64,000 nt of DNA, from NCBI GenBank assembly GCA_024704765.1, contig JAKMXF010000363.1, forward strand, positions 102,706 through 166,705, given 5' to 3'. The position numbers and the translations under genes were made by a program. The notes below the pieces were generated by a model. It did no database searches. It saw only the letters and a program-made list of their open reading frames with translations, and was not told where the DNA came from. The stretch is from Oopsacas minuta (taxonomy: Eukaryota > Animalia > Porifera). Shown piece by piece: positions 8,851-49,917 of this stretch. The first letter of the stretch is position 1. Every line of letters begins with the position of its first letter.

Positions 8851-10212
8851 CAGGGTGGGCCACAGGAGTCTGATCAAAAGTAAATTGCTCTCATTTGAAA
8901 ACGAAACAATAAAACTTAATTCTGTAAAAAGATTTTTAAAATATAGATAAATAGTTTTGTGAATACATCATCCTTTCTTCTTCAGCCATTAATCAGGTGC
9001 TCGATCCATGCCCCTTTCCTACCCAGCACTCTTTGTAATCTGACAAGCACGTTATCGTACACTTTAGCCAGAGTTTCTCCATTAATCTTCATGATTTCTC
9101 TTCTGATGTTCATCTTGAGGTCCTCTAGTGTCTTAGGAACAGGATCCCTGTACACAACTGACTTCAGGTAGCCCCACAGGTAAAAATCGCAAGGATTAAG
9201 GTCCGGGGAATATGGGGGCCAGAAGTTGTCAAATCCACGACCAATCACCCTGTCACCGAACTTCTCTTGTAGCCAGCTCCTAACTAAATTGGCATAGTGT
9301 GGGGGTGCTCCATCCTGATGGAAAGTAATGGTATTCAGTTCACCATGTTTCCTAATGTTGGGAAGGTAAAATCCTTTCAGCATTACCAGGTATCTCCACC
9401 GGTTCACCGTACAGGTCTTACCATCCTCATCTTCAAAAAAGTACGGGCATATGATCCGGTCATGGGCAACTGCACACCAGACAACCAACTTTTCAGTCCT
9501 CAAGGGTCTCTGGGCAATAGGTTCTGGCTTCTCCAATGCCCAGAACCTCATGTTCTGCTTGTTAACATGTCCTGAAAGATGAAAGTTTGCCTCGTCAGAC
9601 CAATGAACTTCAGTGATCTTCAAAAGTTCTTCCTCAATCTTCTTGGAAATGTACGTGGCAAATTGGATCCTCTTCTTCTGATTTGATTCACTTTGCTTTT
9701 GCTGCATCTGTATTTTGTAAGGAAAGGCTCCAATGTCATCATTGAGGATCCTCCTCACTGAGCTCCTACTGATTGCAGTCTCTGCAGATAGCCTTCTTGT
9801 TGCGCGATGGGGTGAATCTGCCAGTTTCTTCTTAATTTTTTGAATGTTTTCAGGGGTTCTAACAGTCTTCTTGGGTCTCTTTCGTTTTCTATTGCCTACC
9901 GTACCACCCTCCTCCATCCTCTTGACAATATTCATGATTGTGTTCCTTACAGGAGCCTTCAATGTCTTGTAATGCACCTTGAAAGCTCGTTGGGCCGAAA
10001 CAACACTTCTCCCGTTTTCAATATACCAGTAGAGTAACTTCACTTTCACATCCTGCTGGAGCGACATTACATAAACCTAGGGGTAGTTTGGTTAGTATTT
10101 TTTAAAAACTATTTATCTCAGCTTTAAAATGAATGGTGAACTACTGAAGTCTGACAAAAATTGCACGTGCTAGAGCAATTTACTTTTGATCAGTCTTCCG
10201 TGGCCCACCCTG
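8851..10212 (-). mobile_element. Full-length Tc1/mariner element, DD41D (rosa/Visitor-type)
   Basis: 41-bp TIRs cagggtgggccac...aaaagtaaattgctct (about 3 differences), TA on both flanks, single intact ORF. Confidence 0.95.
8982..10067 (-). CDS. Intact 361-aa DD41D transposase
   Basis: N-terminal HTH region, WSDEANF, FHQDGAPPH, WPPYSPDLNPCDFYLWG; 41 residues between the second and third D. Confidence 0.95.
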   Translation of the reverse strand: MSLQQDVKVKLLYWYIENGRSVVSAQRAFKVHYKTLKAPVRNTIMNIVKRMEEGGTVGNRKRKRPKKTVRTPENIQKIKKKLADSPHRATRRLSAETAISRSSVRRILNDDIGAFPYKIQMQQKQSESNQKKRIQFATYISKKIEEELLKITEVHWSDEANFHLSGHVNKQNMRFWALEKPEPIAQRPLRTEKLVVWCAVAHDRIICPYFFEDEDGKTCTVNRWRYLVMLKGFYLPNIRKHGELNTITFHQDGAPPHYANLVRSWLQEKFGDRVIGRGFDNFWPPYSPDLNPCDFYLWGYLKSVVYRDPVPKTLEDLKMNIRREIMKINGETLAKVYDNVLVRLQRVLGRKGAWIEHLING

Positions 10213-10467
10213 TATAATGTATTTAACGTTACATAAAAAATATGGAAGTAAGAAAGAGATAACGAGCTGAGAATATATGAGTAAGCATGATGACCAGACA
10301 GATATTCTGATCTGTGTCCAGGCTAGCCCTGTGCTAGAAAAATTCTTCCTTTTTCACTCCACTTCAAACCTATTTGATGTATTTTTGATGCCTTAAAATT
10401 TTGAATCTCTGAGAAGCTAGGTGGATTTAGGTGTAAATTCTGAAATAGTTGCAATCTCAGCCGATGG

Positions 10468-11287
10468 NNNNNNNNNNNNNNNNNNNNNNNNNNNNNNNNN
10501 NNNNNNNNNNNNNNNNNNNNNNNNNNNNNNNNNNNNNNNNNNNNNNNNNNNNNNNNNNNNNNNNNNNNNNNNNNNNNNNNNNNNNNNNNNNNNNNNNNNN
10601 NNNNNNNNNNNNNNNNNNNNNNNNNNNNNNNNNNNNNNNNNNNNNNNNNNNNNNNNNNNNNNNNNNNNNNNNNNNNNNNNNNNNNNNNNNNNNNNNNNNN
10701 NNNNNNNNNNNNNNNNNNNNNNNNNNNNNNNNNNNNNNNNNNNNNNNNNNNNNNNNNNNNNNNNNNNNNNNNNNNNNNNNNNNNNNNNNNNNNNNNNNNN
10801 NNNNNNNNNNNNNNNNNNNNNNNNNNNNNNNNNNNNNNNNNNNNNNNNNNNNNNNNNNNNNNNNNNNNNNNNNNNNNNNNNNNNNNNNNNNNNNNNNNNN
10901 NNNNNNNNNNNNNNNNNNNNNNNNNNNNNNNNNNNNNNNNNNNNNNNNNNNNNNNNNNNNNNNNNNNNNNNNNNNNNNNNNNNNNNNNNNNNNNNNNNNN
11001 NNNNNNNNNNNNNNNNNNNNNNNNNNNNNNNNNNNNNNNNNNNNNNNNNNNNNNNNNNNNNNNNNNNNNNNNNNNNNNNNNNNNNNNNNNNNNNNNNNNN
11101 NNNNNNNNNNNNNNNNNNNNNNNNNNNNNNNNNNNNNNNNNNNNNNNNNNNNNNNNNNNNNNNNNNNNNNNNNNNNNNNNNNNNNNNNNNNNNNNNNNNN
11201 NNNNNNNNNNNNNNNNNNNNNNNNNNNNNNNNNNNNNNNNNNNNNNNNNNNNNNNNNNNNNNNNNNNNNNNNNNNNNNNNNNNNNNN
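10468..11287. other. Assembly gap (N run)
   Basis: 820 N bases; the right edge abuts a tandem repeat. Confidence 1.
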
Positions 11288-11505
11288 CCATTAAATGTCC
11301 CAACATCTGTAGATAAAGGGACAGTTTATATCCATTAAATGTCCCAACATCTGTAGATAATGGGACAATTTTTAACCATTAAATGTCCCAACATCTGTAG
11401 GTAATGGGACAGTTTATATCCATTAAATGTCCCAACATCTGTAGATAAAGGGACAGTTTATATCCATTAAATGTCCCAACATCTGTAGATATTGGGACAT
11501 TTTAT
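11288..11505. repeat. 44-bp tandem repeat with internal palindrome (about 5 units, truncated by the gap)
   Basis: Unit ccattaaatgtcccaacatctgtagataaagggacagtttatat; tgtccc...gggaca forms a hairpin; the array ends in (TA)n. Confidence 0.95.
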
Positions 11506-11980
11506 ATATATATATATATTTAGCATCAATACTTACGTTTTCAATATTTTGTTGTGTGATTCAACAAGTCTGGGACTTTGTGGGTGTTATGCTCTGGTTC
11601 TTCGGGGTTGATATTTATCTTCTTGTGAAATTCTTGAAAATCCTATTATGAAAGTAAATAAGAAAACGATAACAATCTACTACGCACAAGTATTTAGTCT
11701 TGTACAACAATAATTGGAAAGATAAAGCGACTAATAAAGTATATATCCACCCAAAGGTAGTAGGATTAATTCGTAAACTCTTATTTATTCGTATTTCACA
11801 TAAATTAACAACCAATTTCCACACGGTTTCTTAAATATGGCCATCAGGACGCACAATTTCCTACTAGGGTATATATTGAAGCAATGCGTTGACAATTGAC
11901 AATGCAACTTGTTACGTACGTATAACCAATATAGTAAGTTGCATTGTGTATCGGGAATAATTTACTGAGTGTATTTACAA

Positions 11981-12215
11981 TTACTGATCTCGAGTATGTA
12001 AAATATGAGTTACCTTGCTTGAGAATTCTTTTCCCTGGTCATGTTGGAAGATCTTGTGCACGCCGAATGAGAGATAAATTTTCTCTAAACAATCCGATTG
12101 TTCTTTAGAAGTTTTAGTCTTGAGAGGTCGGGAAATGACAAATTTTCTCAGGTAGTACACGATTGCAAGAATGTGCTGAAATCCAAGTACAGTGCGAGAC
12201 ATATTGCATACAAGA
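11981..12215 (-). pseudogene. Integrase (rve) core fragment, Ginger2/KRBA2-like
   Basis: GFQHILAIVYYLRKFVISRPLKTKTSKEQSDCLEKIYLSFGVHKIFQHDQGKEF matches the LRPLK.K.A.EV...FG.P..LQSDNG.EF pattern. Confidence 0.7.
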
Positions 12216-39574: not shown

Positions 39575-41358
39575 CAAACCCAGTGGATCATGTGGCCCCA
39601 TTTTACGGTATGCAGAATGTTTGCCAAAGGGAGATCTGTCTCTTAGGGTCTTACCATCCTTATCATCTAAACTTTAATTGTATCATCTAAATCACAATGA
39701 ATGTGAATAATCTAATACTCTAATGTTTTAATATTGGTTCAAACATGTTCATTTAATTATTAGCCTTAAACACATAACGGAAGGAAGTGAACACAGACTG
39801 TCTCTATCTTAGTAATATTAGTACGACTCACCAGATATTCAAAGGAATACCAAAACAACTTTTCTCACTTCTTTATTTAACATAAATTTCTTATTAGTGT
39901 TAAAGCCAATACCATCCATTATTTAGGCAGAATTTGTATCCACTCTTTCCCAACATTTTTCAAGATATGTATCGCTACCACATTTACGAAAGCATTACAC
40001 ATACTATGAATTAACGCCAGCTGAAACATATCTCAATATATCCTAAAAATTGCATAATCATGAACGATTTGTGATTATAAGTGATAATATGAAATGTACC
40101 AACTTTCTTCTTTACCCTAATGTCGTTCTTTTCAAAATAAAACCCGTAATTTTGAGTAAATGAGGTTTTGTTGGGGTTCGAATACTCTGCTGAATCCTTT
40201 GCTAAGTTAACACTCGTTACCTAGCCGCATATATTCTTTAGGGAACAATTAGTACAGTGGATACCGTTAGAAGAACATTCTTGCCAGTAATAATGTAGGT
40301 TATTATAACCATAATTTATTGTACAGTACTCGCAAGCTCACGCTTGCTATCGCTGCACGTCCTTCGAACATATCGTGTTCGAAGAAGTTACCATTCGGGT
40401 GCCTCCTGTGTTCTGCTTTAGTTAGTAATATTTACTATATACTTATTGAACATTTAACGACTCAATATAGACGTTTCACACGCTACAGCCTAAATCTACT
40501 ATATTTTTCGCATGGTCACATGGTGATTCAATTTGCATTTCGCAATTTTTGCTAAATTTTAAGTTTTGAATATTTTTCTTCATTTTAATTAACCTGTGTT
40601 AGAGGCTAGGACCTGATAGGGCAAGATAATCTCAATTGATACACCCTCGAACTGGTTGGCCAAAAAGATCATTTCACACCCTATCTCAAAGATGTGTGAT
40701 AATCTTGAAATTCTGATGAAAGAATTTGCAATGTTTGTAAATTTTCCTCGTCGTTTGGTACCATTGTCGACCTTTTTTGACCACTGGTTCATACCGAATG
40801 ACTGATGAAAGACAGGCATAGATCCAAACTTACATACCTACAGGTATTCAGACAGAGATTGCTCATTTAATAGTATAGATTTATGAGGACTGTTTTCCTC
40901 AAGATTAATCGTATAACTAGAATGTTCTTATTACCGGCATCCACTGTAATTATTTTGTATGTTTATTTTCCTTCTAACATCATTATTATCTCAAAAATAT
41001 ATTTTAGTGATCCATCAGTGCTTTTCCTCCAGGAAGGCAGACATACATACACTACCGGTTATACAAAATCTTCAAATTTCTGCTACCCTGCCCAAGCTCA
41101 ATTTGAAGAAAATTGCAATTTCTCCCATTCTCAAGAAAACACCTCTCGAGATATACCCACCAACATCCAACTTCCAACCTCGACATCAATGTATGTAATC
41201 TAATTTAATGAATTTACTTCGTTTGCTAGATAATGATGACGTAATATTAATGCGATTAGTATGCACTTTTGTGAAATATTTGGTCAGCTTGTTAGGTTTT
41301 AGTCGTCTACATATTCCATCAAATCTTAAACCCATAATCATATATATTGGCTGAGCAG

Positions 41359-44285
41359 TTGTTAATTAATGAGTGGGACATTAGATTGGCAGATTTCGGT
41401 TATTCCAGGTTCTACAAGGAGAATACGGGAGAGTTCGCTAACAGAAATATCGATATGGAATCCTTAGCGGGCACCCCTGTATTTATGGCGCCTGAAGCTC
41501 TGTATTGTGTGATGTATCCTGGAGGATCATATGACCATACGGTAGACATCTGGTCAGTAGGAGCTCTCCTCTACAGGGTACTAGTAGGGAAGTGTGGGTT
41601 CTTTGCTCCTATACAAGATATTCTTAGAATTCTTAAGGCAAAAGGTGCGTTGCTATATAACTATTCAATGGAATTTACTTAATTATTATTGTTAGGAGAT
41701 GCCATTGCATTTACGCGCCATTCCAGGAAGACAACTTATGTTAGAGAGCTTCCCCCTGAAGTAGATGATATTCTAACACCTGTATTCAAGGATAGAATGA
41801 CGTGGTTAATTAAGAGGTGTTTAGTTGTAGAAGCAACTAATAGAATTACGTATGACGCATTCTTCGAGGTTTGTAATTATAATACAGAGCCAATTCTTAG
41901 CGTCTTTATTAGTGGAGAATTCTGCCATAAATTTTCTTGAATAACAATTTTTGTATAAACTTGAATTATAAGGAGATTTGATATTTGTTATATTGGTCTA
42001 ATTAGACTGTTGACGATCTTGTACAGACTAAGATTCGGTTAGTGTCTGTACACTCCGGTCTGGAGAGTAAGATCCCTTACGGAGATGGTCCTCTACTCCT
42101 CTCAGAGCTTAGGATTGTTATACACACAGACTTTAATATCCAATTGGATAATATTGTAATAATAAGAGACACATTACAGGCAGAATCTACAATTACTGAC
42201 CAATCAGACTTAGACGTTAGTTTGTATTATGTAACCATGGATTAGTGAATAAATTTATTTTAATTTTAGCGTTTTGTAAACTTTTCAAAGTCTCAGCAGT
42301 TTGGAAGTTCCGGTAAAGATCCCAAACTATTTCTGCTGGACCAATCAATTCTCTCACAGATGGACCCTCCTCTCCTTCCCCTCCTGGCCTACGAGGAGCT
42401 GACAGAATTCCTTAAATCTCCAGAAAGGATAGAAGAAGTTCGGACGAGAGATAACATAGAATTTATCCCTCAAATATTCTCTAAGCTTGTCAAGGATATA
42501 GACCTAACAGCTGATTCACAGGCGAGTTCAGTAACCAATCAAATATCTGTGTTTATAATTATCTTAGGTGTCAGGACTTAGCGCCTATATTCAGTATGCC
42601 CTGGGGGCGAAGGAGAGACAAAAATATGAGAGTTAAACTGAATGAGGTGTTAAATCCCCTCAGAATGAGGATTACTTATCTGACCAATCAGCTGACTAGC
42701 TACACAGATTCTCTTAATCTTAGTTACGGAGAGGAATGTGTTAGTTTCAGAGAGATGGCAGCAGAACTGGAATCAATTAGGACACATTTGGAGGATTCAA
42801 TGGCAGAAATAGACGCTGATGTTATCAGGAGACACGGAGCTCTAATGTCCGACACGGAGAGAGCTCCGCCTCTCTCCGTCAGAGATATTATCAAGTCAGC
42901 TGATTGTGTTCATTAGTAGCAATGTTCTAACATTCCTATGTTTGTAGACCGTTACTAGGAGAGTGTAGAGCTCTTAAGAGATTACAGGTGGCAGAACAGC
43001 TGGCCAGAGCTAAGACAATCAGAATAAATATTGAGAACAGACACCAAGACATGAGTGTACAAATACATTACAGACTGAATTCCAATTGTCAAGTTCTGTC
43101 ACAGTTTCAGAACTCGAAAATAGCGCTTTTGGCGCTCGAAAAGGAAATGAAGGTCAGTGGTTGCTGGGTTGATAGAATGGAATGTTATTAATCTATTTTT
43201 AGGAAATTCACTCAATTAAAATTAATTCAATTAACGACAAATTACAGTCTATTTTACTGGCGATTATTCAGACACCTAAACTGACCAATCAGAACCCGGG
43301 GAGCACACAGGACAATTCTGACCAATCACGTCGCTTACAACTGAAATTGTCAGAACTTGAAAGAGAAAATAAACAGCTGATCGAATCTAGCACCAAATTA
43401 AAGGTAGAAAACGAACAGCTGATTGGTCAACTAGACAAGGAGAGAGAAGCTAAACCAATCGTACAAAGTGTGATCGATTCTGCAAATTCTAAGGTGTGAA
43501 ATATTCATATTTAATATCCAGCTAAGGATCCTATCGGTCCCGTTTATAGTAATATTCCTGAGATATCATTGATATATGGAACTAATTAATAGGTTTAGTT
43601 CCTATTCAATTGTGTATAGATAGCAGAATGTAGCTCATGGCTTGATTGGCTGAAAGGAACTTTGGGAGTATTGGAACCGCCATTGGAAGATCAGCTGAGT
43701 GAAGAATTTCAAACAGCTGATTGGGAGCCTACTTTAGGCGCCAGTTGTAGAGAACTTTCTAGAAGTGTACAAAGGTAAGACTATTAATTTGATTGGTTGT
43801 TTAAGCTCATAATTTGATTGGTTGTTACAGATATCCCAGCTCTATGCTAGAACAAATGAAGGCAGAGGTTGGTAGGAAATTGACAAATGAGGAGGCGAGG
43901 GATCCCACGAGCGCTCGGTTTAGTGTTGCAGATTTTAAGAAAGGAAGTTTCGTACTTTTCCTACCGACTAAACCGATGGGACCTTATAAGAGCGTTCCTA
44001 AAGCATTCTGTATTGACAATAAACAATATTTCTTACACAAAGATTGCTACGAATATTTTAAACTGAAACCGGAACAATCTCTCGCGACCTGGCTACTCGG
44101 TAAATATTTCTTGTTGTATATTTATTTGTTTACTTTATGATTACATAATTGTAGGACAAGCTACAGAAGAACCAATCAAAGACACAGCTCATCACGTCTG
44201 TCACTACCCGGCGGGCAGAACTGGAACTGAATTCTTCACAATTCGGGCTAACCTTCATTTCTCCCCAGTTGCTAAGCCTAACTGA
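41359..44285 (+). CDS. RB1CC1-like: Multi-exon gene: TBK1/IKK-like kinase C-lobe + ubiquitin-like domain + ATG17-like helices + coiled coil + ATG11 Claw (RB1CC1/FIP200-like); 5' end unresolved
   Basis: Exons ~41359-41644, 41696-41868, 42006-42215, 42270-~42521, ~42575-42894, 42948-43152, 43203-43493, 43620-43774, 43831-44099, 44155-44285 join in frame (one junction ambiguous). Motifs DFG, GTP.FMAPE, VDIWSVG; LFLLDQSIL..MDPP; QIHYRL; FSVADFKKGSFVLF, YFLHKD, WLLG, GTEFFTIRA. Confidence 0.85.
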
Positions 44286-44416
44286 CCAATCAGATTTTGT
44301 ATTTTTTGAATTTTGAATTTATTTGGATTTGAAAGCTTACTGCAATCCTTAGTTTAAAGCTAGTCGCTGATTGGTTGAGTATAAATACTGTGTTTCTGAT
44401 TAATTTACATTTTAGA

Positions 44417-47400
44417 ATGTCAGATTCCAGAAATAAACATTCACCGCCACTTCCCGAACTAAACAGGACCAGATCTCTATCTCCTCCTGCAGTCAAACTG
44501 GAACGCAAGAAACCGGACGCTCTCAATCTCTCTCCGCAGAGAAATGAACCAGCGACACCCTCCCCTGTCCTCACCCCCATCGGCCCTGGGACAGATGAAT
44601 TGGACACAATTTGGGAGCCCTCAAACACTCTAACCCTCTCCCTCTCTCCTGAGCACGATATGACAGCTCTAAGTCCTCAACATTTAGAGCAGGTAAGTGC
44701 ATAACAACCAAATTACACTCAGAAATGTGATACTATTTAATTTCTGCTTAACTTACAACATGTTATGTGATATCTAGCATGAGTAGGAGTGTGTTCTGAG
44801 GAATGAATTTGATTGGTAGATTAGATAATATCTCATATATGGCGCCTATTTTATATTTGGCTACTAAAGTTCTGATTTGTAAGCAAAGACGGAAATTGAT
44901 TGGTTTAGCTTACAGGTAATTATTTAATAATTCTGACCACTAACTTAGATGTAATCTGATTGGCTATTCAATCAATGGTTTCTGCTTTGTGAATTAATTA
45001 GATTAGAAGTCTAAGATTTCCTTACAAATTAACCTATCAAATTAGTGATATTTGTACAAGCAAGGGTCATTATGCGAGAATATTTATATAATTAGATTAT
45101 TTATTGGTTGTTATCCATGGTTCTATTTATAGATTCTAGAGAAGTTATTAGATCAGAAAGAGAGATTACAAGAACAGCTGAGTGTGCAGGGAGATCAGGC
45201 GCGCTATCTACAGCAAGATCTGAGCAGCTGTACGCGGGAGCGTGATGTGTTGATAGCACAACTTAGTCAGCTGACTCCAGAGCTCTCTAACTCACAGCTG
45301 GAGGACTTGGATGGTTTTAGAACTTGTCCCGAATCCGATCTGTTAGGGATTGAGCCGAGGGCTCGCAAGTTCTGGGACAAATTCCTGAGACTGCGGGGGG
45401 AACTTGAAGGACAGAGGGACATAGTAGGAGAGAGGGACGGGGAGGTTAGGGATCTCCTCAGTGAGAGGAGTAACACTCGGATCCTATTGGAACATTTGGA
45501 GAGACTGGTAGCACGACATGAGAGATCTCTCAGGTCTACAGTAGTTAAGAGGCACACCGCTCAAAATGGAGTAGCATCAGAGGTTTGTTATACATTCCTA
45601 TCTCCCTCTAGCGTAGCTAAGATGTAACTATTCCTTTAAGGTTGAAGTATTAAAGGCCTTGAAATGTCTGTTCGATCATCACAAAACTTTAGACAGAGTT
45701 AAAGACAAACTTAAGACTCAAGTAGCAAGGAATAAAGACCTGGAGGATCAGCTGACTGATTCTATAGCTCAGAGAGAACTCAATCAGCTGGAGAAGTACC
45801 AGAACTATGACGGATTGAGTCAGCTGATTGAGCGGGAGAGGGAGATAGAGGCGTTAAAATTTGAGCTAGATGAGAATAGATTAATTAATGAATCACAGAA
45901 TGAGCAGAGTACACAGGAATTGGAGGAAGCTAGGTAGCCAATCAGATTATACATATCTGCAGAATAATTGAATTTGCATAGAAATTACAAATTCAGGAAT
46001 ATTGCTAGGAACGCTAAGAATGTATTTGATGCATATTTAATATAATATTGGTTGCTAGGGAGATGTACAGCCTGGAGAAAATAAGGTGTGAAGAAGCTAA
46101 CAAAAAGTTAAAAGATCTATACTCACTTCTGACCAGCAAGGAGAGGAATATAAATAAATTGGAGAAACAGGTGATTAAGTGTGAAAAAGACTTAGCAGAA
46201 TTGACACAAGAAGCTAACAGAAGATGTCTGGAACTACAGCGTAAACTGGAACTGATACCTCTTCAGATGTTTGAGCCTAATACTGAGCTGATTGAACCAG
46301 TTAATCAGCTACTAATTGAGTCTAATAATCTATTGACAGAACCCAATAATCTGCTGTTAGATCCTAACAATCAGCTGATTACAGAGAGGAATACCTTGAG
46401 GGAGAGGTTACAAGAAATGGAGGTACAAATGTCAGAGCAGAGAGAAGAACTAGAGAACAAATCAAGTAGTGAAAGACTGATGCAACTCAGATTACAGCAG
46501 ACAGTTGAGAAGTTGTCCCGAGTACAGAGAGACAAAATGGACCTAGAACAGCTGTTACATGAGAACGTATCAATACCCAATCAGAAGAGAGGGTCTAGAC
46601 GTATAAAGAAATCCAACAGACAATCTATACACAATATAATTACAGAAATTAACAGAATGTCAGATGGTAACGGAGATCAGTTGCATCCCTGGTCACAGAA
46701 ACGGCTCATGGATCCTCCCAGACACTCTGAGAGACAGAGACGTAATAGTCCTGACTTAACACCTTATTCCAGCAGGAAGAGCTCTCCCATCGATGAGAAT
46801 AAAGTATCCCCGACAGAGTCTGAGACAGGTGTTAGCGGACTAGGTGCCCCTCTCCGAGAGAGTCATTCTTCACTCTCCGATATAGAAACCGCTACCACAA
46901 TATCTGATACCTCACACATAATAGTGGATGAGTCCCTCCCTGGGAGGACAGAATTGGACCCAGGAGCTCCCAAGCTCTACATGTCCCGCTCCCGAAAGAA
47001 ATCACTCAAGAGGAAGTCCTCTATCCGACGAATCGTCAGTTCCTTTAAAGGAACTAAATCCCCGGGTACAAAAGAGACCCCCTCTTCTCTAGGGGAGTGT
47101 GAGGCCCCGGAAGGGAGACTAGCTAGACTACAGGCCTCAATCTCATTGCTGGAAAGAGAGAACACACAATTCCTGTTATGGTCTCCAGAGGCTCTTCAGG
47201 GGTGGGTAGAGGTGGAGCTAGGTCTACCCGAGTCAGTGGGAGATGCAGTCAGATGGCAATGCAAAACAGTTCCTATGCTCCTGTCAATGGGAGAGAGGGA
47301 CTACGAACAAGAACTGGGAATTCTACAGCCTCTCTTGAGACTCAAACTCATGAAAGCTGTCCAAGAGAGGGTAGCTCACTCTAAGGCTAGTACCCCCTGT

Positions 47401-48194
47401 CTCTTCTCCCCCTACAGAGCTGTTAACCACGAATGGATAGCTTCTCATTGGCTGCCTTCTCTAGGTCTAACTCAGTACAGCAATAATTTCAGGTTTGTTA
47501 TTATTTACTTGTTAGTTAACACGTGTATTTGTTGTTATTTACTATTCTTATTATTAATAGACAATGCTGCGTAGACGGTAGGGTGCTAGAACATTTGTCT
47601 AAGAAGGAACTAAGGACCAGCTTAGGAATGGTTGAGAGTTCCCATAGGAATAGTCTCCAGTACGGAATATTTGCTCTCAAATCTCTCAACTATGACAGGA
47701 ATATTCTAGAAGACAAGCAGAGACAATCAGTCACTGACAGGACAGATCTACCCTTCTGGTCCAACAGACAGATATCATTATGGTTACATTCCATTGGTCT
47801 GGGTGGTTACACGGGTAACATAGAGTCCTCAGGTCTCCACGGAGCTGTCCTATATTTTGATAACTCATATGATTATCATGAGATAGCTATTACTCTACAA
47901 ATTCCTCAGAATGATTCGGTTGCTAGGAAACTACTTAAGGTATCAGTTTCCGATTTAATGTCTCAACAAAAATCTTCCAATTCTGACAAAAAAACTAAGA
48001 GGAAGAGCTTTGTTCTATTCAGGCGGAAGAGTGACGCAGTGAGTCCAAGAATGTCTCCAGAGCCTGAGAGTCAGGACACCGTTACTCCCATGCCCTCTAG
48101 CCCTACTAGGGGACTGGTACCCACTCTCCTAGGACTACACAGCTGTTCGGAAGATGAGGACGATAAGACTAACCCAGTCAAATTTTATTGCTAG
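44417..48194 (+). CDS. PPFIA: Liprin-alpha (coiled coils plus three SAM domains), 5 coding exons
   Basis: ERSNTRILLEHLERLVARHERSLRSTVVKR...SEVEVLKALKCLFDHHKTLD; SAMs W...WVEVELGLP...LRLKL, NHEWI..WLPSLGL.QY, VDGRVLEHLSKKELR, WSN...W..SIGL..Y...SGLHGA. Confidence 0.95.
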
Positions 48195-48265
48195 CTTTTA
48201 AATAAATAATTAAAGTGATTTATTGATTAATAATTTGATTAATAATTTGGTAAATAAACACAAAT

Positions 48266-48506
48266 TTATTTTTTCTTTTTTCCTTTTTCTTTTTTCCTTT
48301 CTTAGTTTCTGTCTTTACAAATCCTGTATAAGTTAGAAAATGTGCAGCATTGTGGCAGACATAATATGCGTCTACAATCTCTGTATGTGTCAGGGGCTCT
48401 TTGGTGGGTCCGGTAGGACCTGAGGACTTCTTTCCTTTTTTGTTTTCTTCTTTCCTGTAACTTTCTTCTTAGGACTCCCAGATCTACCGCGGGCCTTCCC
48501 AGGCAT
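48266..48506 (-). CDS. SMKR1: Small lysine-rich protein 1-like (needs +1 A in homopolymer runs)
   Basis: MPGKARG...KK(frameshift)GKKSSG...EPLTHTEIVDAYYVCHNAAHFLTYTGFVK...KKGKK resembles the SMKR1 core (YYIAHN.A..L...GF). Confidence 0.7.
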
Positions 48507-49275: not shown

Positions 49276-49347
49276 ATATTTAATATTTGTAATAAATTTT
49301 AATAAGCTATGATACATAAATGATTAAAGCTGCAATTTGATTGGTTA

Positions 49348-49917
49348 CTATACTGGCCATTCTTGTGTAGGCTTTATTGGGGGTAAGAACATATCTATTG
49401 GTGTGTTTGGTTGCTGGGGATCTTGCATCAGAGTTATACCTGTCTCCTCTCTAGTTAGATAGGTCCCTTGTCCTCTTTCACACCTCTTAACAACCATACA
49501 TATCAGGATAACAGCTGATGACGCTATTAACAGTAACATCGATATAAACAGGGGCAGTAGAAATGTTAGGATAGGTGTGAGAAGTGGCAGTTGTGTCGTG
49601 GTGGAATCTATAAATTTTACATAAAATATTTGCAAATAATATAATTTAATAAACTTACTTAAACAGAAATCTCCGCTGTACCTAGTTACGCAAAGGCACC
49701 GAAGGAATGTGTCGTTTTGTGTCTCACAAGCGGCACCGTTGGCACAAGGTGTGAAATCACATGGCGTGGTGATTGGACAAGAATTGAGAGAATAATTAGA
49801 AGCCCGCCCGGACAGGAGAGTAGCAATAGAGAGCTCATTTCCAAACAGAACTACATTCCTTATACAGCCACCTGTAACCATGGGAACGTAAAATATTAAT
49901 ATTATTCTGCAATCCAC
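49348..49917 (-). CDS. Short type-I membrane protein: one EGF-like domain, TM and a Crumbs-like tail
   Basis: PCDFTPCANGAACE...CLC...YSGDFC; hydrophobic TM; tail KRCERGQGTY...PP..TQEWPV; probable intron at ~49610-49660. Confidence 0.75.
   Translation of the reverse strand: MDCRIILIFYVPMVTGGCIRNVVLFGNELSIATLLSGRASNYSLNSCPITTPCDFTPCANGAACETQNDTFLRCLCVTRYSGDFCLSKFIKLYYLQIFYVKFIDSTTTQLPLLTPILTFLLPLFISMLLLIASSAVILICMVVKRCERGQGTYLTREETGITLMQDPQQPNTPIDMFLPPIKPTQEWPV

What the first reader, a model, noticed from the sequence alone, without database searches (positions are those of the whole stretch)
41359..44285. TBK1/IKK-like kinase domain spliced in frame to a miniature FIP200/RB1CC1
Seen: the kinase C-lobe ends ...RITYDAFFE|TVDDLVQTKIRLVSVHSG across a phase-0 GT-AG intron (41869-42005). 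It continues through a ubiquitin-like segment, ATG17-like helices and a short coiled coil to a Claw-like end (FSVADFKKGSFVLF...YFLH...WLLG...GTEFFTIRA). Known: TBK1/IKK have kinase-ULD-scaffold architecture (FDQFFAETSDIL...IHVFS junction); the FIP200 N-terminal domain resembles the TBK1 ULD/scaffold but has no kinase; FIP200 recruits ULK1 and TBK1 in selective autophagy. Inference: one polypeptide joining an IKK-type kinase fold to a FIP200 Claw is either a kinase-scaffold fusion or a relic of the common ancestor of TBK1 and FIP200.
Basis: partly seen in the sequence, partly recalled or inferred. Interest (0 to 1): 0.82.

Follow-up and report, generated by a model that had tools for sequence, protein, structure and literature searches.

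The report
Sponge TBK1-like kinase with FIP200 Claw
This is a sponge gene for one protein that joins a TBK1/ULK-type signalling kinase to the cargo-grabbing 'Claw' of the autophagy scaffold FIP200. That combination bears on how TBK1 arose, but the copy in this window has lost the front half of the kinase.

Summary
Ten GT/GC-AG exons (41359-44285, +) read from a kinase C-lobe through a ubiquitin-like domain, a helical scaffold and a coiled coil to a Claw. RNA-like contigs support the 41868|42006 junction. Pfam finds Pkinase on exon 1 and ATG11 on exon 9.

The gene belongs to a family found in all four sponge classes. Databases name its members 'IKK-beta-like' or 'TBK1-like'; one is Amphimedon XP_003387126.1, cited as IKK-like in an NF-kB preprint. 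Intact members have a complete kinase, ULD, scaffold and FIP200-type Claw.
- The Claw is homologous to FIP200's (profile E 1e-10; Z 13, rmsd 2.1 A).
- The kinase-ULD junction matches TBK1 (hhalign 96%).
- The kinase is closest to ULK1/2 by similarity. In a tree it is sister to TBK1/IKK-epsilon (87/84), but a ULK sister cannot be rejected.

This window's haplotype is broken. A deletion removed the start codon, N-lobe and catalytic loop, and 2 bp are missing in exon 5. An intact allele exists in the same sample.

The scan found this family before on other DNA of this genome (s1-293480, s1-273558, s1-284878).

I found no paper that mentions the Claw on these kinases.

The parts
40660..40843 (+). 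5' non-coding exon Ea. The start is approximate; the donor GT is at 40844.
   Evidence: X4 joint 40843|41008, GT..AG. No in-frame ATG.
41008..41190 (+). 5' non-coding exon Eb.
   Evidence: X4 joints 40843|41008 and 41190|41696. One frame is open across the exon but has no ATG; the frame that would join 41359 has a stop.
41368..41369 (.). Deletion junction with 'AA' microhomology. In the other allele the acceptor, ATG, N-lobe exons and catalytic loop lie here; in orthologues that stretch is about 0.65 kb.
   Evidence: A DNA contig of X1 ends ..GATAGGAGGACAAGGGGCCAGGAACAGACC before 41368. That reads DRRTRGQEQT|NEWDI and matches L003 DRRGRGQDPSPEWDM. A DNA contig of X3 continues after 41369 with GTATTTATTTAG|AATGCCGAG.
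41359..41644 (+). Exon 1 as left in this haplotype: kinase DFG, activation segment, APE and helix F. True homology runs from 41368. The cag| at 41356-58 could serve only as a cryptic acceptor.
   Evidence: Pkinase 6.8e-14. 86-90% identical to P0001 and P0002. pN 0.07-0.10 against orthologues.
41696..41868 (+). Exon 2: end of the kinase C-lobe (..RITYDAFFE).
   Evidence: 75% identical to L002. Aligns to the kinase end of all family members.
41869..42005 (+). Phase-0 GT-AG intron between the kinase end and the ULD.
   Evidence: Splice sites. Loose ends of two X4 contigs at 41868 read the sequence of 42006 onward.
42006..42215 (+). Exon 3: linker TVDDLVQTK and the first part of the ubiquitin-like domain.
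   Evidence: The junction motif FV(D/E)DL..SK(I/L).V is conserved across the family. hhalign to the TBK1 ULD: 96%, E 4e-9.
42270..42521 (+). Exon 4: end of the ULD and start of the helical scaffold, followed by a GC-AG intron (donor GCGAGT).
   Evidence: X4 joints 42215|42270 and ~42521|42568. 72% identical to L002.
42568..42894 (+). Exon 5: scaffold helices. This haplotype lacks 2 bp after 42617, which gives a premature stop unless acceptor 42575 is used.
   Evidence: 'AC' is put in after 42617 in X4 and X2 contigs. With AC the reading VSGLSAYIQYALGAKERHKNMRVKL matches L002 VSGLNAYVQYALSARERYKALRMKL.
42948..43152 (+). Exon 6: scaffold helices.
   Evidence: X4 joints. Collinear with L002 and L003.
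43203..43493 (+). Exon 7: coiled coil.
   Evidence: Only weak coiled-coil Pfam matches. Collinear with orthologues.
43620..43774 (+). Exon 8: linker helices before the Claw.
   Evidence: X4 joint 43774|43831. 80% identical to L002.
43831..44099 (+). Exon 9: Claw domain (FSVADFKKGSFVLF..YFLHKDCYEYF..WLLG).
   Evidence: ATG11 PF10377 2.6e-5. The family profile hits the FIP200 Claw at E 1e-10.
44155..44285 (+). Exon 10: last Claw strands (GTEFFTIRA) and stop codon TGA at 44283-85.
   Evidence: X4 joint 44099|44155. 84% identical to L002.

Best explanation
The stretch is most of a sponge gene, probably from a glass sponge. It belongs to a family present across Porifera. The family's protein is, in one chain: an active-looking Ser/Thr kinase, a ubiquitin-like domain, a long helical scaffold/dimerisation domain, a short coiled coil, and a FIP200/ATG11-type Claw.

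In overall build it is an IKK-related (TBK1/IKK-epsilon-like) kinase. Its C-terminal adaptor-binding end is a Claw, and its kinase domain still looks ULK-like.

Inferred mechanism for the intact protein:
1. The Claw docks on FIR/LIR-type motifs of cargo receptors or adaptors.
2. The scaffold dimerises.
3. Local clustering lets the kinases activate each other on the activation-loop serine.
4. The kinase then phosphorylates receptors or autophagy factors.
This would give a self-contained selective-autophagy or innate-immune kinase.

In this window's haplotype a deletion, about 0.65 kb by comparison with orthologues, has removed the acceptor, start codon, N-lobe and catalytic loop. A 2-bp deletion also shifts the frame in exon 5. 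This copy is therefore a null or severely crippled allele that is still transcribed and aberrantly spliced. An intact allele is present in the same sample.
For: Shown:
- Exon model and junctions.
- Pkinase and ATG11 on window exons.
- Family members with both domains: P0007 Sycon and P0183 Corticium carry PF10377. The Claw alignment holds across 17 members.
- All catalytic residues are invariant in the family.
- The family is present in Calcarea, Homoscleromorpha, Demospongiae and Hexactinellida.
- The Claw matches FIP200: profile E 1e-10, Foldseek E 1e-6, VIA Z 12-13 with rmsd 2.1-2.6 A over 88-95 residues.
- The ULD and scaffold resemble TBK1/IKK: hhalign 96%, TM 0.56-0.62, Z about 9.5, language-model features 0.97.
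- The kinase tree puts the family sister to TBK1/IKK-epsilon at 87/84, or 97/94 when junction columns are included.
- The family shares Ser-Leu-x-Gly-Thr in the activation loop and an insert after APE with TBK1.
- Deletion allele: loose ends at 41368 and 41369 match the orthologue exon and a start-codon context. No N-lobe is found in 64 kb. Synteny with L002 and L003 begins exactly at 41365.
- The 2-bp deletion.
- Strong purifying selection, kinase exons included: pN 0.07-0.16 with saturated pS. This points to a recent loss.

Inferred: the mechanism, by analogy with TBK1 and FIP200.
Against: - Only 30 letters of each loose end are visible, so the size and content of the deleted segment are inferred from orthologues.
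- The intact version could be a very recent duplicate rather than an allele.
- Run X4 is of unknown library type.
- The structure model is of low confidence outside the ULD and the Claw (mean pLDDT 60). Helical-bundle Z scores near 9 are not specific; the FIP200 NTD scores 8.8-9.4 as well.
- Pfam models TBK1_ULD, TBK1_CCD1, IKBKB_SDD and ATG17_like do not hit.
- By similarity the kinase is nearest ULK, and the AU test does not reject a ULK sister.
- No functional data exist for the Claw of these proteins.
Confidence: 0.75

Rival explanations
1. The window copy is a working gene for a kinase-less protein. In this reading the protein is a C-lobe remnant plus ULD-scaffold-Claw, translated from the internal Met (..NIDMESLAG or ..DRMTWLIK). 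It would act as a scaffold or as a dominant-negative partner of the intact paralogues.
For: The frame is open from MESLAG to the stop if acceptor 42575 is used. The locus is transcribed and spliced. The kinase C-lobe exons are highly conserved.
Against: The observed exon-5 acceptor is 42568, which gives a stop without the AC allele. The only joint seen from Eb skips exon 1 and lands out of frame, with a TGA across the joint. Conservation is explained by the intact allele or by a recent loss. An intact form exists in the same sample.
Confidence: 0.12
2. The window copy is a fixed pseudogene, and the intact sequence seen in the reads belongs to a recent duplicate at another locus.
For: There are two disabling lesions in one copy. 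Earlier notes report intact family members on other pieces of this genome.
Against: Both flanks of the missing segment are shared with the window. An X3 contig runs from the window's left flank into the missing segment, and an X1 contig runs from the segment into exon 1. The downstream genes are collinear with the orthologous loci L002 and L003, so this is the ancestral locus.
Confidence: 0.13
3. At family level, the architecture is a sponge-only fusion of a ULK-type kinase with a small FIP200/ATG11 paralogue. On this view it is a 'Rosetta stone' of the ULK1-FIP200 complex. It resembles TBK1 only because the FIP200 N-terminal domain and the TBK1 ULD-SDD are alike.
For: ULK1/2 are the best kinase matches by 20-35 bits. 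The motifs DFGFAR and MAPE are ULK-like. The AU test does not reject sponge+ULK (p = 0.148). No non-sponge member was seen.
Against: The tree prefers TBK1/IKK-epsilon as sister (87/84, or 97/94 with the junction) even though the TBK1 branch is long. The activation-loop Ser-Leu-x-Gly-Thr and the post-APE insert are shared with TBK1. The kinase-end/ULD profile matches TBK1. Language-model neighbours are all TBK1/IKK. The literature reports only these proteins as the IKK-like genes of Amphimedon.
Confidence: 0.3
4. Two neighbouring genes (a kinase and a FIP200-like gene) have been wrongly joined.
For: None beyond the 137-bp intron, which is longer than its neighbours.
Against: RNA-like contigs bridge 41868|42006. 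There is no stop or start between the parts. The junction motif is conserved in 17 proteins from four sponge classes, including single-contig transcripts.
Confidence: 0.02

Closest known systems
TBK1 / IKK-epsilon (IKK-related kinases)
   Same: The domain order is the same: kinase, then directly a ubiquitin-like domain, then a long helical scaffold/dimerisation domain. The kinase-end/ULD profile match is 96%. Structure gives TM 0.56-0.62 and Z about 9.5. Both share the activation-loop Ser-Leu-x-Gly-Thr and an insert after APE. The family is sister to TBK1/IKK-epsilon in the kinase tree. Databases already name members TBK1-like or IKK-beta-like.
   Different: The C-terminus is a FIP200-type Claw instead of TBK1's adaptor-binding coiled coil. 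The kinase sequence is much closer to ULK (DFGFAR, MAPE). The Pfam TBK1_ULD, TBK1_CCD1 and IKBKB_SDD models do not hit.
FIP200 / RB1CC1 (ATG11 family)
   Same: The C-terminal Claw is homologous (PF10377; profile E 1e-10; Z 13, rmsd 2.1 A, 28-30% identity). An N-terminal ULD plus helical scaffold is also the build of the FIP200 NTD, which Shi et al. 2020 (PMC7337493) found to resemble the TBK1 ULD+SLD. The FIP200 NTD in 8SOI and 8SRM scores Z 8.8-9.4.
   Different: It has a kinase domain in front. Total length is about 780-1100 aa against about 1600. The coiled coil is very short. There is no Pfam ATG17_like hit.
ULK1/ULK2/ATG1
   Same: The kinase domain is most similar to ULK by sequence (121-137 bits, 33-36% identity over the full domain).
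   Different: It has no C-terminal tandem-MIT/EAT domain (PF12063, PF21127). It has a ULD, scaffold and Claw instead. The tree places ULK one node further out.
Amphimedon queenslandica XP_003387126.1 ('IKK-like', TBK/IKK-epsilon-like; Williams et al., bioRxiv 10.1101/691097)
   Same: It is a member of the same family (P0179, 948 aa), with the same junction and a Claw-like end.
   Different: The paper treats it only as an IKK/TBK homologue and does not mention a Claw. The window's gene belongs to another branch of the family, nearest Oopsacas P0196.

Membership tests
Protein kinase superfamily (PF00069) | Pfam Pkinase match above the gathering score | tested here: met
   Exon 1 scores 52.3 bits against 31.7. 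Family members score 143-192 bits.
Protein kinase superfamily (PF00069) | Gly-loop, VAIK lysine and HRD catalytic loop present in this copy | tested here: not met
   None is found in the 64 kb by regex or by tblastn. They are invariant in intact relatives and present in L002 and L003.
IKK-related kinases (TBK1/IKK-epsilon) | Kinase followed directly by a ULD and a helical scaffold/dimerisation domain | tested here: met
   hhalign 96%, E 4e-9 over the kinase end plus ULD. Foldseek gives IKK-beta E 1e-4 and TBK1 E 7e-3 over about 380 columns. ESM Atlas TM 0.56-0.62.
IKK-related kinases (TBK1/IKK-epsilon) | Kinase domain groups with TBK1/IKK in a phylogeny | tested here: inconclusive
   Sister to TBK1/IKK-epsilon at 87/84 (kinase columns only) and 97/94 (with junction columns). 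The AU test does not reject sponge+ULK, p = 0.148. No IKK-alpha/beta sequences were sampled.
IKK-related kinases (TBK1/IKK-epsilon) | Pfam TBK1_ULD / TBK1_CCD1 / IKBKB_SDD | tested here: not met
   No such hit at E <= 0.01 in 18 family proteins.
FIP200/RB1CC1/ATG11 | C-terminal Claw (PF10377) | tested here: met
   Window exon 9 scores 24.7 bits against 22. P0007 scores 28.5 bits. Profile against the FIP200 Claw: E 1e-10. VIA Z 12-13, rmsd 2.1-2.6 A.
FIP200/RB1CC1/ATG11 | N-terminal ULD plus ATG17-like scaffold | tested here: inconclusive
   The model shows a β-grasp domain and three long helices. ATG17-like clusters score TM 0.42-0.44. The FIP200 NTD scores Z 8.8-9.4, within the range usual for helical bundles. 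No Pfam ATG17_like hit.
FIP200/RB1CC1/ATG11 | No catalytic domain; long central coiled coil | tested here: not met
   A kinase domain precedes the ULD, and the coiled coil is about 100 residues.
ULK/ATG1 | Kinase domain most similar to ULK1/2 | tested here: met
   Against the PDB, ULK2 scores 135.6 bits, ULK1 121-131 and ULK3 109-111, while other kinases score about 100 or less. ULK/ATG1 of animals, plants and amoebae score 121-137 bits.
ULK/ATG1 | C-terminal tandem MIT / EAT domain (PF12063, PF21127) | tested here: not met
   Absent from all family members scanned.

The most novel reading that the evidence does not exclude
The sponge proteins preserve the ancestral form of the IKK/TBK1 family. 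On this reading a ULK-type kinase was fused to a complete small FIP200/ATG11-like scaffold (ULD, helical domain, Claw). TBK1 and the IKKs of other animals descend from it, having lost the Claw and strongly remodelled the kinase. This would turn the suggestion of Shi et al. 2020, that TBK1 is a chimera of a kinase with a FIP200-like N-terminal domain, into a concrete and testable history. It would also root an innate-immune kinase family in the autophagy-initiation machinery.
Probability: 0.35. Interest if true: 0.85.

Novelty: new variant of a known kind. Interest (0 to 1): 0.62.

Why it matters
FIP200 and TBK1 cooperate in selective autophagy. The FIP200 N-terminal domain was found, unexpectedly, to look like TBK1's ULD plus scaffold, which prompted the idea of a shared origin (PMC7337493).

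A natural protein now carries all the pieces together: kinase, ULD, scaffold and Claw. It is conserved across all sponge classes, and its kinase is intermediate between ULK and TBK1. That makes it the kind of link that can test the shared-origin idea.

It also gives a compact, single-chain model of receptor-docked kinase activation that could be studied biochemically. It further suggests that what the sponge literature calls IKK/TBK may act in autophagy rather than, or as well as, in NF-kB signalling.

The window itself adds a natural knock-out allele: a transcribed copy lacking the kinase N-lobe.

Tried and rejected
1. Decayed catalytic loop. tblastn extends the kinase match upstream of exon 1 as 'IFHQILNP*SYILAEQ' against IVHRDLKPxNIL. 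I first read this as a decayed catalytic loop. I rejected it because the loose ends of DNA contigs show this stretch is the 5'-UTR intron of the intact allele, brought next to exon 1 by a deletion.

2. Single-exon searches of the PDB for exon 2, exon 3 and exon 9 found nothing significant.

3. The word-indexed protein search with the non-kinase part of P0173 found only one relative. The range of the family outside sponges therefore rests on kinase-based searches and is not exhaustive.

4. Pfam finds no ATG17_like, TBK1_ULD, TBK1_CCD1 or IKBKB_SDD in any member.

5. Lineage-specific dN/dS was dropped. Synonymous sites are saturated between the window and L002/L003, and the deletion is polymorphic, so no relaxation signal is expected.

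6. The spliced window protein could not be passed to the fold or family tools as one piece. Relatives (P0196 and others) were used instead.

7. Searches for a separate canonical FIP200, ULK or TBK1 in this genome were not possible with the tools left.

Full report
**1. What is in the window**

The window is AT-rich eukaryotic DNA (about 35% G+C) with short introns. Reading the three + frames and checking splice sites gives ten coding exons:
- 41359-41644
- 41696-41868
- 42006-42215
- 42270-42521
- 42568 (or 42575)-42894
- 42948-43152
- 43203-43493
- 43620-43774
- 43831-44099
- 44155-44285, with stop codon TGA at 44283-85

All introns are GT-AG except 42522-42567, which has a GC donor (GCGAGT).

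Four public runs of one sample hold the stretch. Three behave like DNA. The fourth, X4, has very uneven depth, adapter-ended contigs and GT..AG joints, so it behaves like RNA, although its library type is not on record.
- X4 gives the joints 40843|41008, 41190|41696, 42215|42270, 43774|43831 and 44099|44155.
- With one mismatched base each, it also gives ~42521|42568, ~42894|42948 and 43152|43203.

Pfam on single exons finds Pkinase on exon 1 (6.8e-14) and ATG11 (PF10377) above its gathering score on exon 9. The observation therefore stands.

**2.

No Gly-loop, VAIK or HRD motif exists anywhere in the 64 kb on either strand. This holds by regex and by tblastn with intact relatives. Upstream lie two spliced exons (about 40660-40843 and 41008-41190) that contain no usable ATG. 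If 41190 were joined to 41359, the frame would carry a stop 29 codons upstream, and the first ATG would be the one in ..NIDMESLAG. The only joint actually seen from 41190 skips exon 1 and lands on 41696, creating a TGA across the joint.

**3. Relatives**

A full HMMER search of 1.84 billion proteins with exon 1 found two near-identical fragments (P0001 at 86% identity, P0002 at 90%). It also found a set of longer proteins at 51-66% identity. These form a family.
- Sycon ciliatum XP_065194105.1 (P0007, 1052 aa) has Pkinase at 23-304 and ATG11 at 925-1045.
- Oopsacas minuta has two members (P0011, P0196).
- Further members are Corticium candelabrum P0183 (with a precomputed ATG11 hit), Amphimedon XP_003387126.1 (P0179), Ephydatia (P0178) and Dysidea (P0181).
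- About ten proteins from metagenome or Logan assemblies complete the set.

All four sponge classes are therefore represented, and no non-sponge member appeared. NCBI names these proteins 'IKK-beta-like' or 'TBK1-like'; EukProt names one 'ULK2'.

All catalytic residues are invariant. A MAFFT alignment shows a conserved kinase-end | ULD junction..(E/D)FF(E/D) | FV(D/E)DL..SK(I/L).V. It also shows a conserved Claw pattern, F.V..F..GD.VL..P .. YFL.K .. W..G .. FY.V.A. The window's protein aligns end to end with Oopsacas P0196, starting at that protein's residue 167.

**4. The window's haplotype is a deletion allele**

P0001 and P0002 lie on sponge contigs L002 and L003. Both contigs carry the complete gene, with the N-lobe exon (LGKGAFGEVFLGY..VAVK..) and the exon ..IVHRDLKPQNILLKFP..WD(I/M)RLADFG. 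From 41365 onward the window is collinear with both loci through this gene and at least two downstream genes. Nothing upstream of 41365 matches.

In the DNA runs, one contig reaches 41368 from a different sequence ending ..GATAGGAGGACAAGGGGCCAGGAACAGACC. In frame this reads DRRTRGQEQT|NEWDI and matches L003's DRRGRGQDPSPEWDM residue for residue in spacing. Another contig follows the window up to 41369 and then continues GTATTTATTTAG|AATGCCGAG... This looks like an acceptor followed at once by ATG (MPRSD..). L002 has the same arrangement, and Oopsacas P0196 starts MPK.

Both flanks are therefore shared, and a segment is missing from the window between them, with 'AA' microhomology at the junction. 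By comparison with L002 and L003, the missing segment is about 0.65 kb. It holds the acceptor, the start codon, the N-lobe exons and the catalytic loop.

I first read 'IFHQILNP*' just upstream of exon 1 as a decayed HRDLKP loop. I now reject that reading, because this stretch is the UTR intron of the intact allele.

A second lesion lies in exon 5. With the supported acceptor 42568, the window reads VSGLSAYIQYALGAKERQKYES*. Contigs of X4 and X2 carry two extra bases (AC) after 42617, which restore ..AKERHKNMRVKLNEV.., the reading found in L002.

Non-synonymous divergence from the orthologues is low everywhere and lowest in the kinase exons (pN 0.07-0.16). Synonymous sites are saturated. The gene was therefore under constraint until recently, which fits a polymorphic null allele.

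**5. What kind of kinase**

- Against solved structures, the kinase domains of Sycon and of a probable demosponge member known only from a Logan assembly (P0173) hit ULK2/ULK1 best (135 and 121 bits). ULK3 follows (111 and 109 bits), then generic kinases (about 100 and 95 bits). Human TBK1/IKK are not in the best 60.
- In the large database, ULK/ATG1 of animals, plants and amoebae score 121-137 bits against P0155.
- Invertebrate TBK1 scores 97-113 bits against P0173.
- An IQ-TREE analysis (LG+C20 PMSF) used 15 family members, 16 ULK/ATG1, 10 TBK1/IKK-epsilon and 11 other kinases.
  - It puts the family as sister of TBK1/IKK-epsilon, with support 87/84 on kinase columns alone.
  - Support rises to 97/94 when about 30 junction columns are kept.
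  - ULK is the next branch out (75/73).
- The TBK1 branch is very long (2.3). Long-branch attraction would pull it toward the outgroups, not toward the sponges.
- The AU test does not reject a sponge+ULK clade (p = 0.148).
- The activation segment is a mosaic. DFGFAR and MAPE are as in ULK. Ser-Leu-x-Gly-Thr at the position of TBK1's activating serine, and an insert between APE and helix F, are as in TBK1.

**6. The rest of the protein**

AlphaFold2 of P0196 residues 318-909, with a 17-sequence family alignment, is of low overall confidence (pLDDT 60). It does show four elements:
- a β-grasp domain (pLDDT 70-80);
- three very long helices;
- further helices;
- a β-rich C-terminal domain (pLDDT 67-89).

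Foldseek against the PDB puts the FIP200 Claw first (E 1e-6 to 1e-4, TM up to 0.81). IKK-beta follows (E 1e-4, about 380 columns), then TBK1 (E 7e-3). VIA-align gives the Claw Z 12-13 at rmsd 2.1-2.6 A over 88-95 of 92-96 residues, with 28-30% identity. TBK1 scores Z about 9.5, IKK1 9.2 and the FIP200 N-terminal domain (8SRM, 8SOI) 8.8-9.4. The helical scores are within the range usual for bundles, so they do not separate TBK1 from FIP200.

Three further comparisons:
- A profile of the family's non-kinase part hits the FIP200 Claw in the PDB at E 1e-10.
- Profile-profile comparison with invertebrate TBK1 tails gives 96% probability (E 4e-9) over the kinase end and first half of the ULD.
- The ESM Atlas's own model of P0011 (305-722) matches IKK-beta at TM 0.62, TBK1 at 0.56 and ATG17-like proteins at 0.42-0.44. 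Language-model features of the whole Corticium protein are nearest TBK1, IKK-epsilon and IKK-alpha clusters (0.97).

**7. Comparison with what is known**

Shi et al. [quoted passage not shown] Williams et al. (bioRxiv 10.1101/691097) list XP_003387126.1 as one of two IKK-like proteins of Amphimedon, nearer TBK/IKK-epsilon. They do not mention a Claw.

Five full-text searches found no paper that describes a Claw on these kinases or a kinase-FIP200 fusion.

Earlier notes of this scan report intact members of the family on other pieces of this same genome and call it a glass sponge (s1-293480, s1-273558, s1-284878). This agrees with my tree, where the window fragment sits with Oopsacas P0196 (98/72) inside a starred hexactinellid group.

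**8. Verdict**

It needs two corrections. By similarity the kinase is ULK-like, although its best tree position is beside TBK1/IKK-epsilon. And this particular copy is a crippled allele that lacks the first half of the kinase.

The family is annotated in databases, but its Claw seems to have gone unremarked in the literature I could search. I rate it a new variant of a known kind. The mechanism (Claw docking, scaffold dimerisation, trans-activation) is inferred by analogy and is untested.

Noticed in passing
window 42200-46600: The heptamer CCAATCA/TGATTGG is concentrated here. 18 of its 27 occurrences in the 64 kb lie between 42200 and 46577, inside exons and introns of this gene and the next, often as TGACCAATCAG or CTGATTGG. 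Another reader noted a 16-bp palindrome here (s1-305120). It looks like an NF-Y/CCAAT-box core, but its meaning inside genes is unexplained.
   Followed up: partly
window 40933-40937: DNA contigs show a polymorphic insertion with a 5-bp overlap. One contig leaves the window after 40937 (TGTGGTAGTGTCATGTGTCCTCCCTA..) and another enters at 40933 (..CCCGGAGGACCACTGCCCCTCTGAC). The ends share GTCCTCC/GGAGGAC, so this may be a transposon present on the other haplotype.
   Followed up: no
window 44417-48420: The next gene on the + strand starts MSDSRNKHSPP.. and is a coiled-coil protein whose orthologue parts in L002 and L003 carry faint SAM_1/SAM_2 hits. It is collinear with L002 and L003, as is a further gene on the opposite strand at 49327-49891.
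   Followed up: partly
window 42522-42567: This is a GC-AG intron (donor CAG|GCGAGT). The orthologue L002 has an ordinary GT donor (CAG|GTGAGT) at this position.
   Followed up: partly
window 10468-11287: A run of N (assembly gap) explains the 20% G+C bin at 10001-12000.
   Followed up: yes
window 40795-40841: An X4 contig replaces this part of exon Ea with 40 divergent letters (TATGATGAAGACAGGCGTAGATCCATAGTTACATGCCTAC) before joining 41006. This is a second, diverged allele or paralogue of the 5' exon.
   Followed up: no
P0003: This 827-aa protein matches exon 1 in nine separate stretches and carries two MIT domains, so it is ULK3-like. It looks like a gene model with repeated or mis-joined kinase pieces.
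   Followed up: no
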